From Podarcis muralis (lineage: Eukaryota): DNA of 64,000 bases. Positions 5,119 to 64,000 of this stretch are shown in pieces. The position numbers were made by a program, and so were the translations under genes. The stretch's first letter is position 1; every line of letters begins with the position of its first letter. A model generated the notes under the pieces. The model worked only from the letters and a program-made list of their open reading frames with translations. It searched no databases and had not been told where the DNA came from. The DNA lies in the NCBI RefSeq assembly GCF_964188315.1, contig NC_135655.1, positions 87,358,001-87,422,000 of the forward strand. The letters run 5' to 3'.

Positions 5119-12650
<7,532 letters not shown>

Positions 12651-13073
12651 AACAAAAGAAATGGGGTTAGCCCCCTTCCATGCCTGTCAGTGGATAAATG
12701 CTACCTTTCAGTAATTGACTGCAATCTTGAGGATCACAGCCCCACTGGGGTAACATCTGTGCCTTAGTTTTCTTCTTATGATTCCTCTGAAGAAAGTCCT
12801 CCAGAACCAAACAACTGTCAACATGTGCTGCTGCTGGCTTTGATGTAAAAGGGTAAATGCATCTCTCATGACTTCTGCTCTTGCAATTTGCACTCTAAGC
12901 TCCGCTCACTAAATCACGTACATATGCTGCATTAACAAGGTGCTGGAGTGAATTACGGTCCAAGTTCTGTAGCTTGCTATCATCACAGCCTTTCTGATTG
13001 CCATGCATTGATTACTCACTTCTGCCATAAGAGTCTTTGGCACAGCTCCCAGAGATGAGAGATGTTGGTGCAC

Positions 13074-13079
13074 AATAAA
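13074..13079 (+). terminator. Candidate PECR polyadenylation signal
   Basis: AATAAA ~420 nt after the stop, followed by a GU/U-rich stretch (TGGTGGTTTGT...GTTGTGTTTT). Confidence 0.5.
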
Positions 13080-13170
13080 CTGGTGGTTTGTATCTATGTT
13101 CAAAGTTGTGTTTTATCTTCAGTGGGAGTAGGCAGCATGGGTACTAACTGCCACTTGAAAACATCTTTAG

Positions 13171-13386
13171 GTAAAAAAGGTAAAGGGACCCCTGACCATA
13201 AGGGACCCCTGACTCTGGGGTTGCGGCGCTCATCTCGCTTTATTGGCCGAGTACAGCTTCCGGGTTATGTGGTCAGCATGACTAAGCCGCTTCTGGCGAA
13301 CCAGAGCAGCGCACGGAAACGCTGTTTACCTTCTCGCACCTGTTTATCTACTTGCACTTTGACGTGCTTTTGAACTGCTAGGTTGG
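13171..13386 (-). mobile_element. Sauria SINE (subfamily A), 5'-truncated
   Basis: Matches the copy at 34873-35226; 9-bp TSD CATCTTTAG (13162-13170, 13387-13395). Confidence 0.88.
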
Positions 13387-13904
13387 CATCTTTAGCCTGT
13401 ACTATACTTTAAAAGTTCAGAGATTCAGAAAGGGAAATGCCTTCATCTTCAACGCATGGAGAAAACAATGGCAAAGCTTCATTTTGTTCACGTGTTGCAA
13501 GATAGTTTATTTTTCTAAACTAGCACTGCTTGTCTTGGACAGTTTGATTTGCAAGCCTTCAGGCTGGTATGTGCCATAGCCATCATACTGACTTAATTCT
13601 AGTGATTAGAGAAGTTGTCCAGAAACATTTCCCCCCCATAAAGGAGCTGAAGAGGAGAGGTGGCAGATGAAGAACTGAAATATGGATACTTCATTATCAC
13701 TGCAATTACCAGAACCCAAGGGGAAGAAAAAGCATTAGAGCTATAAGGGGAAAGCTCATGTTAGCTGCAGTTCCTTGCTTTTAATGAATTGCATTTTATA
13801 TATTTATTTTGCCAAATAAAAAAGAAAATTAGCAAAAATTAATCCTGCCAGAGTGTAATACTTTGAAGGGATAGTTTCAAAGCCAAGTTACTGCACAAAT
13901 TTAA

Positions 13905-14885
13905 ATGTTTAGTATCTAAACATTGGTTCTTGGGAGTCCTCATTTTCCTCTAGGCGGAAGTGTAGTAGCAAAAAAGGGAATGGAATATCCTTTTCTTCCC
14001 TGATAACAGTGCATCTTCTTTTCATAATTGACCGCTGTTGTGACAGTTAGGAAGTTTGCATCACCCTTTGCAAACACTGTTGAACAATGGATATCTATCA
14101 GTTTACAAACAGTTTATGAACTGTCTTGTTAGCAAGGAAATACTCATTTATTTGAACATCCACGTCGCTTTTGAAGTTCACCTGCACACCAATGATGCCT
14201 TTTGATCTACTCAGATGTGTACTATCCTTCACTGATAGACCAGATTTATAACCATAAAAGACAGTTAGTAGGTTACTGTATTTCTGGAAAACGTAATTAA
14301 CAGATTGCCTTGGTGTAGGGTGGCTGCATTTAATTCAATCTTTGACGAGAACAAACATCAGCAACCTATTAAGGAACCCTTTAGTGACTCTTCTGTTATT
14401 TCCCTGCCTACTGTGGCCCACAGTGCTTCAGGAAGGATTGGCTTGTTTGTCTTTCTTAAGCAGTCCAGAGAAGCTCCAAAAAGTGATAATGGGAACATTC
14501 ATAATTGAAGACACGTGAGAGAGCTTCACTCACGCTCTTTGCTGATAAAGCCAGATGCTGGAAAACAAAATGTCTATGGGCTAACAAACTACTTTCACTC
14601 CATTTTTTGCTTTGCTCTCTTGAATGTATATTGTGAAACACTTTTCTTACTATGGACTTCAGAATGTGTTGCCCAGCATTGACATCTTGACCCTAATGTC
14701 ACTTTGTTTCCTGTTTCATAGTGATGGAGGGTTTCTATCCTGGAGGTAATCATAGTTAAAACATTTGCTTTGTTTTTATTTTTCCATCCTGGATTAGATG
14801 CTGTTCTTGTGTTTGACACTGTGGTTCCGTTTAACTTCCAAACGGTATTGTTCATTTCTGTACAATGGGCCGGAAATCAACAATG
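13905..14885 (-). mobile_element. Decayed DNA-transposon protein fossil with XPG/PIN-like nuclease motifs (Academ-like)
   Basis: Minus-strand multi-frame translation gives, in the family's order: PAHCTEMNNTV..LNG, YLQDRNP (14748-14728), YTFKR (14630-14616), FQHLALSAK...VFNYECSHY, LRKTNKPILPEALW (14459-14418), NYVFQKY...VFYGYKSGLSVKDSTHLSRSKGIIGVQVNF...FLANKT (stop-free frame 14334-14101), AKGDANFLTVTTAV (14071-14030), TVIREEKDI (14010-13984). Family assignment is from memory. Confidence 0.72.
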
Positions 14886-15200
14886 CACAAAACACTTCCT
14901 TAAAAACAAACAATGTCTCCTTCACATGGGTTTATGCAAAGAAAACATTTAACAGAAAGGTGTACACACACATATATTACACAGTATAAGGCTTACTAGA
15001 ACTATCGCAGGTTCCCAGAATGGAAAAGGCTGTGTTTCCAATTCCACCTAGTGACTAGCCAGACTATTACATTTCATCTATTTATAGACAACTTAATTTT
15101 CAGAATTTCTGCACCTTGCCCATAAACGTGTTTTAAAAATAATAATACAGGAAACAAGAATGATAAAAATTTGTCTCCCGAATAAGCCAGCTTTAAGCCA

Positions 15201-15259
15201 TGCCTGGCGTGCTCTGGTCCATGGGGTCATGAAGACTAAACGACTAAACAACAACAACA
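15201..15259 (+). mobile_element. Very short Bov-B LINE 3' end with (CAA)n tail
   Basis: GCCTGGCGTGCTCTGGTCCATGGGGTCATGAAGACTAAACGACTAAACAACAACAAC; 6-bp TSD AAGCCA (15195-15200, 15260-15265). Confidence 0.75.
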
Positions 15260-15620
15260 AAGCCACGCGAGTTCTGTTGGCTTGTTGACATCCCTCGCCA
15301 GCACAGCATTCCTGCACACACGCGCTCTCCCCAGGCTGCGTCCTAGGGGATCGAACCCGCGATCCAAGGACGGGCAGAAAGGCAGGCAGGCAAGCACTGC
15401 CCCAAAGAGATCCACAAGGCGGTAGGGGAAACTGCGCATACTCCTTCTGATAATCGCTTTTCGCGTCATCGGCCACTGTGTGGCGAGCGTCGCTCGCGAG
15501 GTACGGAGAGCTCTGGATTGTGCACCACAGAGATAAGAATCTAGAGAAGGCCATCATTATCGAGACGGAGAATTTCAGGGTTCGCACAAGAGTGTGTCTG
15601 TAGGGTCAGAAGCGAGCGCT
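15260..15620. promoter_or_regulatory. Second, separate CpG-rich island with promoter-type motifs
   Basis: About 28 CpGs counted by eye in 15241-15620. CTCGCGAG (BANP-motif core) 15493-15500, palindrome GCGAGCGTCGCTCGC 15483-15497, TGCGCAT (NRF1-like half) 15433-15439. Confidence 0.55.
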
Positions 15621-16199
15621 GCCCATAGAAATCAGTGGAGAAACAGGATTTTGTAGGAGGTGAAGCTGAAGTGAGAAGCAGGGCTGACTTTCCACTCAAG
15701 GCTGCCTAATGCAAAACACCCTTCAGCTCAATCTTATTCATTTGCCTCCTCAAATCAACCTGTCAGGCCAGCTCCAATATGCAGTCGCATGCAAAAGCAT
15801 TATGTTTTTAAAACTCTAATTACTAAAATAAATATATTTAACAATATACACAAGAAATCGGGACGTGAACAAGGAAGAGTATGAAGTTCTGACTTTTCTA
15901 CCTTGTTTGAGGAGAGCTCTAACTATATTAAAATTGTGGATTTCTCCATTGTTAGAAGGAGAAAACATTTACAATTAACCCGGAAATTTCTTCCTAGCAA
16001 AATCCAGTTTTACAAATATACGATCCAGATCAATTTTAGAATGGAAATGTCAGTTAACTTCTTTGGATCCTGCAACTTGCAGACTTGTGAGTCCCAATCA
16101 AGGAAGTTCTGCTTCTATACTGTATAAGAGTTGCGTTTATCCTCAGTTAGTAGTTCTCTGACACAAAGCATATTTATTTCGGCGGTGGATTTATTTTAT

Positions 16200-17250
16200 T
16201 TTATTTTTTTACATCTTAGAATCCCCAAGACCTCCAGCGCTGTCGCTCTGCGCTCAGAGGAGATCATAGATGCCGGGTTTCCTTTTTATTTTTTTCCCCC
16301 GACAGGCAGTTGGACGCTATGGGAAGACGGGGTGGGTGTCCTCAGACGTCACCGGAACTACAACTCCCATGATCCCTCATTATTGGCTACGCTGTCATGG
16401 GGCTTGCTGGGAGTTGTAGTCCTACGACTTCACCGGGTTACAAAAGCTATCCTTTCGGGAGACTCTTTCTCCGAGCGCGCTTCTTCAGGCCACCCGCGAG
16501 CCCCTTTCCGAATAAAGTCTCCGTAGGGGGACGCGGCTCTTTCCCTCCTTCGTGCCTTTTATTTATTTATTTATTTATTTATGCGCGACGTGCGTCGTGA
16601 CGTTGCGACGTTCCCGTCTTGTGTGTGTGTGTACGGGAGTCACGGGCTCCTGCGTGGGGGGAGGCGGAGCCTGAGGAGATCTTGAGGAGGAAAAAGAACA
16701 GGGGTTGCTTGTGAGGGGTGGGGGTGGGGGAAAGGTCTGCTCGAATAGGAGACGGGCACCGGGTTGGGGTGGTGGGGGCTCCTTGCGCGCTTCTTTCCCT
16801 TCCCCCTCCGGCCCCCGGGTAGCGCAGGGGAGAGTGAGGGGGGGCCGCTGCCTCATTGGCCACTTCCACCTCCTCCCCCGGCTCTTTCTGTGGGTCTGTC
16901 CCCCTACCCCCGCATCGACGTGCTGCTTGCCCCCCCTCCCTGCGGAGGGGGTGTTGCTGGGCCTGCTGTTCTCTCCCCCCCGCGCTCCTCACTGGTACCC
17001 GGTGAGGGGTGAGAGTGGGTCTGGCCTCAGCTGAAAGCCAGGATCCTGGACCCCTCCGGTGTTCGAGGCCTGGAGCTGCCGGCTTCTGGGGGGGAGGAAA
17101 CCCTCCGCCTCCCCCCCCCCCCCCACTTCCTCGTCGCTGCCCCACAGGTAGGTAGTGTGCACGCGCGCGCGTTCATGTCGCCTGCTCTGGTGTCTGAGGA
17201 GATGGGGGAAAGGAGCCTCTTGCTCTTGGTGTAGGAGACCCCACCCCCCT
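16200..17250 (+). promoter_or_regulatory. MAP3K2: CpG island: MAP3K2 promoter and probable non-coding first exon (candidate donor CAG|GTAGGT at 17147/17148)
   Basis: Very GC/CpG-rich against an AT-rich background. Inverted ACTACAACTCCCA pair (16357-16369, 16408-16420), ATTGG (CCAAT box) at ~16382, CRE-like GACGTCA at ~16346 and TGACGT near 16598. Lies 8.3 kb upstream of the ATG exon. Exon limits are inferred. Confidence 0.75.
16558..16582. repeat. (TTTA)n tract inside the CpG island
   Basis: Direct reading. Confidence 0.85.
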
Positions 17251-19372: not shown

Positions 19373-19725
19373 TAAAGGTACCCCTGCCCGTACGGGCCAG
19401 TCGTGTCCGACTCTAGCGTTGTGCGCCCATCTCATTTAAGGGGCCGGGGGCCAGCGCTGTCCGGAGACACTTCCGGGTCACGTGGCCAGCGTGACAAGCT
19501 GCATCTGGCGAGCCAGCGCAGCACACGGAAACGCCGTTTACCTTCCCGCTAGTAAGCGGTCCCTATTTATCTACTTGCACCCGGGAGTGCTTTCGAACTG
19601 CTAGGTTGGCAGGCGCTGGGACCGAGCAACGGGAGCGCACCCCGCCGCGGGGATTCGAACCACCGACCTTTCGCTCGGCAAGCCCTAGGCGCTGAGGCTT
19701 TTACCCACAGCGCCACCCACGTCCC
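19373..19725 (-). mobile_element. Sauria SINE (subfamily B), full length
   Basis: tRNA-like head with GGTTCGAATCCC B box on the minus strand; 12-bp TSD GTACAACACATA (19361-19372, 19726-19737). Confidence 0.92.
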
Positions 19726-25513: not shown

Positions 25514-41286
<15,773 letters not shown>

Positions 41287-46139: not shown

Positions 46140-46501
46140 GTAAAGGTAAAGGTACCCCTGCCCATACGGGCCAGTCTTGCCAGACTCTAGGGTTGTGCGC
46201 TCATCTCACTCTATAGGCCGGGAGCCAGCGCTGTCCGCAGACACTTCCGGGTCACGTGGCCAGCGTGACAAAGCTGCATCTGGCGAGCCAGCGCAGCACA
46301 CGGAACGCCGTTTACCTTCCCGCTGGTAAGCGGTCCCTATTTATCTACTTGCACCCGAAGGTGCTTTCGAACTGCTAGGTTGGCAGGCGCTGGGACCGAA
46401 CGACGGGAGCGCACCCCGCCGCGGGGATTCAAACCGCCGACCTTTCGATCAGCAAGCCCTAGGCGCTGAGGCTTTAACCCACAGCGCCACCCGCGTCCCG
46501 C
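46140..46501 (-). mobile_element. Sauria SINE (subfamily B), full length
   Basis: 14-bp TSD AACATTGTTGCTAG (46126-46139, 46502-46515); near-identical to 19373-19725. Confidence 0.93.
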
Positions 46502-56064: not shown

Positions 56065-56162
56065 GCTAGCCCATGGATGCTTAGGCTGCCTAATAAATCT
56101 GTTAGCCTGTGAGATGCCACAAGCCTCTGGGCTGCTCTTTGCTGCATCTGTCGTGGATGCTT

Positions 56163-56243
56163 CAGCTGAGATTCCTGCATTGCAAGAGGGCTGGACTACA
56201 TGTATGACCCTCGGGGTACCTTTCCAACTCTACGATTCTACGA
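56163..56243 (+). mobile_element. CR1 LINE 3' end fragment abutting the ERCC3 CpG island
   Basis: CAGCTGAGATTCCTGCATTGC...TTCCAACTCTACGATTCTACGA. Confidence 0.78.
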
Positions 56244-56590
56244 CACCCGACGGTCAGCGACCTCCTTTCTGCCAAACGGCCGGCCCTGCTGCGCTCCGCG
56301 GCAAATCCGCCTTTTTCCTGGGCACTTGGGAAAGCGGCTCCAGGCTGAAAAGAGGCCCCACCCCGGCAACTTTAGCCCTGGGGGCGCACGCCTCTTTCCC
56401 TCCCGTGCAAACCCCCCGTTCCTGTCGTCCCCTCGTCCCCCCCCCCCCCCCGCAGATCGGCCATGTTATGGAGGCGGAGAGGAACCGGATTCGCTCCCTG
56501 TCCTGCTCCGGAAGCGGCGGGGCGAATGGGAAGGGACGCGGAAGGGAGGCGTGAAAGCGGCGTTGCGCACTCTGCCGAAGCCGCGTCCCG

Positions 56591-64000
<7,410 letters not shown>

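What the first reader, a model, noticed from the sequence alone, without database searches (positions are those of the whole stretch)
13905..14885. Hidden fossil of an XPG/PIN-nuclease transposon protein (Academ-like) between PECR and MAP3K2
SEEN: the minus strand carries about 1 kb of frameshifted coding sequence that the ORF track mostly misses. A 78-codon stop-free frame (14334-14101, no long start-initiated ORF) reads ...NYVFQKYSNLLTVFYGYKSGLSVKDSTHLSRSKGIIGVQVNFKSDVDVQINEYFLANKTVHKLFVN. After a frameshift comes CSTVFAKGDANFLTVTTAV, then TVIREEKDI. Upstream frames give YLQDRNP, YTFKR, FQHL...VFNYECSHY and LRKTNKPILPEALW. KNOWLEDGE: VFDG...K...H..RR / GDAD / GEDTD is the acidic active-site pattern of FEN/XPG (PIN-fold) nucleases. 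As I recall, this whole ordered series (YLxERNP, FTFKR, LFQRL, FxYEL, RKxNKxxLxxAIW, VVFDGY, FLANKxNK, GDAD, GxDTD) belongs to the large proteins of Academ (AcademX) DNA transposons, which carry an XPG domain. INFERENCE: this is an old, neutrally decayed copy. The catalytic acidic residues are eroded (D>Y in VFYGY, D>N in GDAN, GEDTD>REEKD). Academ is best known from invertebrates and fish, so a squamate copy may be unannotated.
Basis: partly seen in the sequence, partly recalled or inferred. Interest (0 to 1): 0.85.

Follow-up and report, generated by a model that had tools for sequence, protein, structure and literature searches.

The report
Decayed Academ-type transposon gene fragment
A 0.9-kb stretch on the minus strand is the dead, frameshifted middle piece of the big protein gene of a cut-and-paste DNA transposon that carries an XPG/FEN-type nuclease (AcademX-like); it is real but is ordinary genomic junk, silent and decaying.

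Summary
Window 14873-13956 (minus strand) aligns, with frameshifts allowed, to positions 886-1226 of a ~1470-residue protein family. The score is 359 half-bits, against 44-67 for every other block of the window and 31-46 for shuffles. The copy has 13 frameshifts and 6 in-frame stops, and is 43% identical to the family consensus.

The family is multi-copy in corals, molluscs, jellyfish and echinoderms. I showed here that it belongs to a DNA transposon:
- Five Porites copies are >99% identical over a 6.42-kb element.
- The element has 16-bp perfect inverted termini and 3-bp target duplications.
- The central region folds like DDE transposases (P element Z 13).
- The C-terminal half folds as a Rad2/FEN1/EXO1 nuclease (pLDDT 91.6).

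These are the published traits of AcademX. A direct comparison with Repbase or Dfam Academ proteins could not be run.

The fossil keeps only the linker and the first half of the nuclease domain. It has no transposase core, C-terminus or termini. Three nuclease acidic positions are changed (D>Y, D>N, D>E). It has no RNA-seq coverage, a CpG ratio of 0.30, and is shared with two close relatives at neutral-looking divergence.

An Academ protein fossil of amniote age is already published (Frith 2022). The scan also noted two similar fossils elsewhere in this genome; those notes are unchecked. Low interest.

The parts
13956..14873 (-). Whole detectable fossil: an internal fragment of the transposon protein gene, aligned to family consensus positions 886-1226 of 1470. 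It has 294 matched codons (43% identical to consensus), 13 frameshifts, 6 in-frame stops, 36 deleted positions and 6 inserted codons.
   Evidence: Frameshift-aware profile-to-DNA alignment; nulls.
14361..14873 (-). Remnant of the family-specific linker between the transposase core and the nuclease domain (positions about 886-1079). It carries YLQDRNP (14745-14728), YTFK (14627-14619), FQHL...VFNYE and LRKTNKPILPEALW.
   Evidence: HMM domains 995-1037 and 1019-1070; tblastn pieces colinear with P0005, P0011 and P0022.
14101..14334 (-). 78-codon stop-free frame, the best-preserved piece: the N-region of the XPG/FEN-type nuclease (positions 1102-1170). The VVFDGY motif reads VFYGY, with the catalytic Asp 1119 changed to Tyr at 14256-14254.
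   Evidence: phmmer; HMM E 2e-13.
14354..14359 (-). Remnant of the first acidic motif (LDGG in the family). Asp 1080 is kept at 14359-14357; the two following Gly are lost.
14015..14098 (-). Start of the nuclease I-region (positions 1178-1205). GDAD reads GDAN: Asp 1190 is kept and Asp 1192 is changed to Asn at 14056-14054.
   Evidence: HMM domain; alignment of this motif to EXO1 E150/D152.
13956..14001 (-). GEDTD motif remnant reading REEKD (14001-13987; D1214>E, T1215>K, D1216 kept), then the LLCYH remnant. The detectable homology ends here.
13176..13388 (.). Flanking high-copy SINE-like repeat, not part of the fossil. Three more copies lie in the window, and it attracts very deep RNA reads with loose ends.
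15155..15351 (.). Flanking high-copy repeat on the other side, not part of the fossil. Only this segment of the proposed CpG island attracts RNA reads.

Best explanation
This is a dead internal fragment (about 918 bp, roughly 23% of the coding sequence) of the single large protein gene of an AcademX-type cut-and-paste DNA transposon.

In living relatives, one protein of about 1470 residues combines:
- an N-terminal zinc-finger-like region;
- a DDE/RNase-H-like transposase core with an all-helical insertion domain;
- a family-specific linker;
- an XPG/FEN-type metal-dependent 5' nuclease domain;
- a C-terminal Cys-rich (CXC-like) domain.

The element is bounded by short inverted repeats and makes 3-bp target duplications.

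The copy in this window once sat here as part of such an element, or arrived already truncated. It lost its transposase core, C-terminus and termini, and has since drifted neutrally. It now does nothing: it is not translated, not detectably transcribed, and has no intact catalytic site.

Shown here: the homology, extent and decay of the fossil, and the transposon nature and domain folds of the family. Inferred: the name Academ (from defining traits), neutrality, and age. Three crude proxies suggest about 0.13-0.15 substitutions per site since inactivation. They are amino-acid retention of 43% against 59% in living members, 13 indels per 918 bp, and 6 stops.
For: - Peptides present as described.
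- 67 hits at E<1e-3 for the 78-aa piece, at about 36-52% identity apart from three repetitive proteins.
- Colinear top four HMM hits among 4290 pieces.
- Frameshift-aware score 359 against a null of 31-67.
- The family is multi-copy in Porites, Mytilus, Littorina, Patella, Mercenaria, Solemya, Nucella and Sanderia.
- Porites element: 6.42 kb, five loci >99% identical, 16-bp perfect TIR, 3-bp TSD in 4 of 5 copies.
- Nuclease domain: EXO1 E 0.004 with FDG / DAD / EDTD / GCD aligned to the catalytic acids; the model (pLDDT 91.6) matches Rad2, FEN1, EXO1 and XPG.
- Central region: P element transposase Z 13.0, Hermes 8.8, Transib 8.6, RAG1 6.8.
- AcademX is described as nuclease-encoding with 3-4 bp TSDs (PMC10045372).
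- Decay: 13 frameshifts, 6 stops, changed acidic residues, CpG o/e 0.30.
- Zero depth across the fossil in the part of RNA run X23 that was read, about 12 in 100 of the run.
- Contigs of two related organisms cover 14012-14461 (19 differences and 4 gaps in 450) and 14247-14418 (6 in 172). This is no more conserved than the flanks, which differ by 3.4-7.8%.
Against: - No direct comparison with curated Academ proteins (Repbase/Dfam) was possible, and the key paper (Kojima 2020) is not in the held library.
- Pfam alone barely sees the XPG domain: 1 of 34 members at E<0.1.
- The fossil has no transposase core, TIRs or TSD of its own, so the transposon identity is borrowed from invertebrate relatives that are only about 30-43% identical.
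- No closer relative (above about 52% identity) exists among the predicted proteins searched, so the vertebrate lineage of this element is not characterised.
- RNA absence rests on one raw-read run, read at about 12% of its depth.
Confidence: 0.85

Rival explanations
1. It is a fossil of an XPG-bearing DDE transposon that is not a true member of the Academ superfamily, but a separate, unnamed lineage with convergent architecture.
For: No direct sequence comparison with curated Academ proteins was possible. The transposase region's best structural match is the P element transposase. Pfam gives only a sub-threshold DUF6589 match.
Against: The combination found here is a single large protein with a DDE core plus an XPG nuclease plus a Cys-rich tail, short TIRs and a 3-bp TSD. 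This is the combination described for AcademX (PMC10045372; also my own recollection of Kapitonov & Jurka 2010 and Kojima 2020). As far as I know, no other named superfamily carries an XPG nuclease. The 3-bp TSD found here differs from the 8-bp TSD that I recall (not checked here) for P and hAT elements.
Confidence: 0.1
2. It is the remains of a host gene domesticated from such a transposon, driven by the neighbouring CpG-rich stretch at 14855-15620, that later died.
For: A CpG-richer stretch (o/e 0.79; 1.02 at 15352-15620) lies directly upstream on the coding strand. An earlier first-stage note (s1-152858) raised this idea.
Against: - Only an internal 23% of the protein is present, without start, transposase core or C-terminus.
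- It has 13 frameshifts and 6 stops.
- RNA depth is zero over 13776-15154 and 15352-16336 in the raw-read run. The only signal in the 'island' is a high-copy repeat at 15155-15351.
- No joints link the island to the fossil.
- Divergence from relatives is no lower than in the flanks.
Confidence: 0.03
3. It is a pseudogene of a cellular XPG-family nuclease (FEN1, EXO1, GEN1, ERCC5), or a chance pattern.
For: The acidic motifs are those of the XPG family.
Against: Similarity to EXO1 is only remote, even for the family profile (E 0.004). In contrast, the fossil is 43% identical to the transposon family over 294 codons, including about 190 codons of a transposon-specific linker upstream of the nuclease domain. 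Chance is excluded by the nulls.
Confidence: 0.01

Closest known systems
AcademX lineage of the Academ superfamily of DNA transposons (Repbase Academ-1 type; Kapitonov & Jurka 2010; Kojima 2020, as cited in PMC10045372)
   Same: In the living relatives of the fossil: one large protein with a DDE-type transposase and an XPG-type nuclease, terminal inverted repeats, and 3-bp target duplications within the published 3-4 bp range. The host range is invertebrate-rich.
   Different: The fossil keeps only the linker and the first half of the nuclease domain. It has no transposase core, termini or TSD. Direct sequence membership against curated Academ entries was not tested.
Academ protein fossil of amniote age in the human genome (Academ-1_NV_tp match on chr4 near NDST4; Frith 2022, PMC9004415)
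   Same: A short, degraded, frameshifted protein-coding relic of an Academ transposon in an amniote genome, invisible to ordinary ORF and repeat annotation.
   Different: It lies at a different locus (this window holds an ERCC3-like exon, recognised from memory only) and in a different host lineage. This fossil is longer (918 bp against 152 bp) and apparently less decayed. Whether it is as old is unknown.
Cellular XPG/Rad2-family nucleases (FEN1, EXO1, ERCC5/XPG, GEN1)
   Same: The family's nuclease domain has the same fold and the same acidic metal-binding motifs.
   Different: Only remote sequence similarity. The transposon domain is fused to a transposase and a CXC-like tail. In the fossil, three of the six family-conserved acidic positions checked are changed (D>Y, D>N, D>E).

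Membership tests
AcademX (Academ superfamily, XPG-encoding lineage) | Significant protein similarity to curated Academ transposases (Repbase/Dfam) | not testable with these tools
   No Repbase or Dfam library is available. Kojima 2020 (PMC7165386) is not held. No held paper contains both 'Academ' and 'XPG'.
AcademX (Academ superfamily, XPG-encoding lineage) | An XPG/FEN-type nuclease encoded by the element | tested here: met
   Family profile against PDB: EXO1 E 0.004 with catalytic motifs aligned. The AlphaFold model (pLDDT 91.6) matches Rad2, FEN1, EXO1 and XPG in all top 50. The fossil aligns to the first half of this domain.
AcademX (Academ superfamily, XPG-encoding lineage) | [quoted passage not shown] | tested here: met
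   Met for the family: the central-region model matches P element transposase (Z 13.0), Hermes (8.8), Transib (8.6), ISCth4 (8.0) and RAG1 (6.8). Plain Foldseek was weak (E about 0.1). This part is absent from the fossil itself.
AcademX (Academ superfamily, XPG-encoding lineage) | Terminal inverted repeats and 3-4 bp target site duplications | tested here: met
   Met for the Porites relatives L001-L005: a 16-bp perfect TIR and 3-bp TSDs (ATT, TAA, AGT, AAT) in 4 of 5 copies, with the fifth at 2 of 3 bases. The published range comes from PMC10045372. Not testable on the fossil, which has no termini.
AcademX (Academ superfamily, XPG-encoding lineage) | Dispersed multiple copies in the host genome | not tested
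   Only this window is readable. Two other first-stage notes of similar fossils in the same genome (s1-179081, s1-153019) are unchecked. No second copy lies in this window.
Cellular XPG/Rad2 nuclease pseudogene (FEN1, EXO1, GEN1, ERCC5) | Best and full-length similarity to a cellular XPG-family protein | tested here: not met
   The best matches are transposon proteins. About 190 codons upstream of the nuclease domain match the transposon-specific linker. EXO1 similarity is only remote.
P element / hAT superfamilies (best structural matches of the transposase core) | 8-bp target site duplications; THAP (P) or BED plus hAT dimerisation (hAT) domains | tested here: not met
   The TSD is 3 bp. Pfam finds no THAP, BED or hAT dimerisation domain in full-length members. 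The defining features in this row are from my own knowledge.

The most novel reading that the evidence does not exclude
Academ-type transposons were active in the squamate (or lepidosaur) lineage well after the amniote ancestor, possibly after a fresh horizontal arrival. They are not merely Paleozoic relics. The arguments are the fossil's moderate decay (43% identity to an invertebrate-derived consensus, a 78-codon open stretch, roughly 0.13-0.15 substitutions per site by crude proxies) and the scan's two other unchecked notes of similar fossils in the same genome. This would extend the known host range and timing of a superfamily thought to be essentially absent from amniotes.
Probability: 0.3. 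Interest if true: 0.4.

Novelty: new member of a known kind. Interest (0 to 1): 0.25.

Why it matters
By itself this is neutral junk: a dead fragment of a known transposon type. It has two modest values.

First, Academ is one of the least characterised DNA transposon superfamilies and is hardly recorded in amniotes. Repbase listed no trace in human (PMC5753468), and Frith 2022 found a single amniote-age relic (PMC9004415). A well-preserved 0.9-kb relic in a reptile genome, probably with sister copies, helps to chart when this superfamily was last active in tetrapods.

Second, it shows that ORF-based and standard repeat annotation miss such relics, while frameshift-tolerant protein-profile alignment recovers them cleanly.

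As a by-product, the session documents a young, apparently intact 6.42-kb element of this family in Porites corals, with its termini and target duplications.

Tried and rejected
- Pfam on the six separate pieces of the fossil gave nothing meaningful.
- The ESM Atlas feature search on the 78-aa piece gave only unrelated bacterial clusters at or below 0.87. The Atlas on full-length P0148 added only mollusc and echinoderm clusters.
- Inverted-repeat search around the fossil found no credible TIR pair.
- The top two phmmer hits (P0001, P0002) and P0044 are repetitive proteins, not single-stretch family matches.
- Searches for the N-terminal 885 and C-terminal 244 family positions in the flanks, on the same strand, gave only null-level scores.
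- Single-sequence Pfam detects XPG_I in only 1 of 34 family members. The XPG assignment therefore rests on the profile and the fold, not on Pfam.
- Literature: Kojima 2020 could not be read. No held paper links DUF6589 to Academ. The Frith 2022 supplement held as text has no Academ counts.
- Look-ups of cluster names found no vertebrate member.
- The search of earlier findings by sequence was blank.

Full report
**1. Observation.**
- the 78-codon stop-free frame at 14334-14101 (...NYVFQKYSNLLTVFYGYKSGLSVKDSTHLSRSKG...FLANKTVHKLFVN);
- then, in another frame, CSTVFAKGDANFLTVTTAV;
- then TVIREEKDI;
- and upstream YLQDRNP, YTFKR, FQHL...VFNYECSHY and LRKTNKPILPEALW.

The start-to-stop ORF list indeed shows only short pieces.

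**2. Is it more than chance?**
Yes, on three tests.
- The 78-aa piece alone, scored against 1.84 billion representative proteins, has 67 hits at E<1e-3. Three of them (P0001, P0002, P0044) are repetitive proteins, not single-stretch family matches. The rest are single-stretch matches at about 36-52% identity over roughly 45-70 residues.
- I built an HMM from 84 full-length relatives and scanned all 4290 stop-to-stop pieces of the six frames of the whole window. The four best pieces all lie here, on the minus strand, and are colinear with the protein: 14614-14486 matches positions 995-1037, 14543-14391 matches 1019-1070, 14307-14077 matches 1102-1179 (E 2e-13), and 14098-14015 matches 1178-1205.
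- A frameshift-aware profile-to-DNA alignment of my own joins these into one alignment from 14873 to 13956, covering family positions 886-1226 of 1470. It scores 359 half-bits. The same procedure gives 44-67 on 21 other 5.5-kb strand blocks of the window and 31-46 on ten shuffles of the region.

**3. State of the copy.**
Searches give the following.
- 294 codons are matched and 43% are identical to the family consensus. Living members are 59% identical to that consensus on the same columns, and 47% identical to each other.
- There are 13 frameshifts, 6 in-frame stops, 36 deleted positions and 6 inserted codons.
- 28 of the 42 columns that are at least 95% conserved in the family are kept.
- Of six family-conserved acidic positions of the nuclease motifs, three are kept and three changed:

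| Family position | State in fossil | Window coordinates |
|---|---|---|
| D1080 | kept | 14359-14357 |
| D1119 (VVFDGY) | Tyr | 14256-14254 |
| D1190 | kept | 14062-14060 |
| D1192 (GDAD) | Asn | 14056-14054 |
| D1214 | Glu | 13995-13993 |
| D1216 | kept | 13989-13987 |

The CpG observed/expected ratio of the fossil is 0.30.

Nothing resembling the N-terminal 885 positions (zinc-finger region and transposase core) or the last 244 positions is detectable on the same strand in the flanks; scores there are at null level. The relic is therefore an internal fragment of about 23% of the protein: the family-specific linker plus the first half of the nuclease domain. High-copy SINE-like repeats lie on both sides, at 13176-13388 and about 15155-15351.

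**4. What the family is.**
- **Distribution.** Full-length relatives are about 1450-1530 residues and massively multi-copy. Named hosts are Porites, Mytilus, Littorina, Patella, Mercenaria, Solemya, Nucella and Sanderia. Source names are uninformative ('Tesmin/TSO1-like CXC domain-containing', '5'-3' exonuclease', hypothetical).
- **Pfam.** It sees almost nothing: sub-threshold XPG_I in one member, and sub-threshold DUF6589 in 15 of 34 members.
- **Nuclease domain.** A profile of 36 full-length members searched against PDB sequences finds human EXO1 first (E 0.004). The family's vvFDG, gDAD, GeDtD and GCD motifs align to the EXO1 motifs ILVFDG, YEAD, TEDSD and GCDY. By my recollection these hold EXO1's catalytic acids (D78, E150/D152, D171/D173, D225). 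An AlphaFold model of the domain (pLDDT 91.6) matches only FEN-superfamily nucleases in its top 50: Rad2/XPG, FEN1, EXO1, XRN and T5 flap endonuclease.
- **Central region.** A model (pLDDT 81) gives weak Foldseek hits. On re-alignment it matches DDE transposases with an inserted helical domain: P element transposase Z 13.0 over 359 residues, Hermes 8.8, Transib 8.6, ISCth4 8.0, RAG1 6.8, followed by RNase H-fold proteins.
- **Element structure.** Five genomic loci of a Porites lobata / P. evermanni subfamily share a 6.42-kb element at over 99% identity, in unrelated flanks. The termini are a perfect 16-bp inverted repeat. Four of five copies have perfect 3-bp target duplications (ATT, TAA, AGT, AAT), and the fifth matches at 2 of 3 bases.

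The family is thus a cut-and-paste DNA transposon whose single protein fuses a DDE transposase to an XPG-type nuclease.

**5. Comparison with what is known.**
The Academ superfamily has two lineages. AcademH encodes a helicase and makes 9-10 bp TSDs. AcademX encodes a nuclease and makes 3-4 bp TSDs (PMC10045372, citing Kojima 2020). That the nuclease is of XPG type, and that a Cys-rich finger follows it, is my own recollection of Kapitonov & Jurka 2010 and Kojima 2020. Neither could be read here.

All traits that I could test agree with AcademX. The one decisive test, direct similarity to curated Academ proteins, cannot be run with these tools. I put about 85% on AcademX and about 10% on a separate XPG-bearing lineage.

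Repbase listed no Academ trace in human (PMC5753468). However, Frith 2022 reported a 152-bp Academ protein fossil of amniote age near NDST4 (PMC9004415). An Academ relic in an amniote therefore has a precedent.

**6. Function now.**
There is none.
- In a raw-read RNA-seq run of the same organism (about 12% of the run read), depth is zero from 13776 to 15154 and from 15352 to 16336. The only signal in that span comes from the high-copy repeat at 15155-15351.
- No joint links the CpG-richer stretch at 14855-15620 to the fossil.
- Assembled contigs from two related organisms cover 14012-14461 (19 differences and 4 gaps in 450) and 14247-14418 (6 differences in 172). The flanks differ by 3.4-7.8%. 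The fossil therefore predates the split of these close relatives and shows no extra conservation.

**7. Age (inference only).**
Three crude proxies each suggest roughly 0.13-0.15 substitutions per site since inactivation. These are amino-acid retention (0.43 against 0.59), 13 indels in 918 bp, and 6 stops in about 300 codons. That implies an old insertion, perhaps of the order of 10^8 years. These data cannot tell whether it predates squamates.

Two other first-stage notes report similar fossils 41 and 47 Mb away in the same genome (s1-179081, s1-153019). They are unchecked, and I could not read those sequences.

**8. Verdict.**
The finding is a new, possibly unannotated copy of a known kind of element, with a published amniote precedent. 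Interest is low to moderate.

The claims 'squamate' and 'between PECR and MAP3K2' were not tested. The window does hold an exon that I recognise from memory as the N-terminus of ERCC3 (58307-58663, + strand).

Noticed in passing
window 13176-13388, 34876-35113, 46142-46385, 19470-19611: A SINE-like repeat with four copies in the window (72-83% identical). It attracts enormous RNA-contig depth and many loose ends in all four runs, so it is a high-copy transcribed repeat family.
   Followed up: partly
window 15155-15351 (core 15201-15235): A second high-copy repeat segment inside the proposed CpG island at 14855-15620. It is the only part of that island with RNA reads. The rest of the island and the fossil have zero depth in the raw RNA-seq run.
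   Followed up: partly
window 12397-13184 (+ strand RNA): A well-expressed stretch (depth about 30-200 in the raw RNA-seq run, first mate on the minus strand) ending about 0.8 kb before the fossil. A 1314-nt contig ends at 13092. It is probably the last exon or 3' UTR of a + strand gene.
   Followed up: no
window 58307-58663 (+), with a GC-rich region at 56100-56800: This ORF encodes [18 protein letters not shown]...[43 protein letters not shown] recognise it from memory as the N-terminus of ERCC3/XPB, with a CpG-rich promoter-like region upstream.
   Followed up: no
window 16500-17200: A GC-rich stretch (65% GC, CpG o/e 0.64) with a 188-aa G/P/R-rich ORF on the minus strand. It looks like a CpG island. 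RNA depth is very low in the run examined.
   Followed up: no
L001-L005 (Porites lobata / P. evermanni), element e.g. L004:5365-11788: A 6.42-kb element of the same family is present at five loci at over 99% identity. It has a 16-bp perfect TIR (TAGTCTAGTCATTCTA), 3-bp TSDs and an apparently intact gene of about 1470-1495 aa. It looks recently active in these corals.
   Followed up: yes
protein P0001 (878 aa, source not looked up): A predicted protein made of about 9 tandem repeats. Each contains an ...IIFEGYGSGPSTT... unit that resembles the family's VVFDGY..GPSTKD nuclease motif. It may be a satellite built from a fragment of such an element.
   Followed up: no
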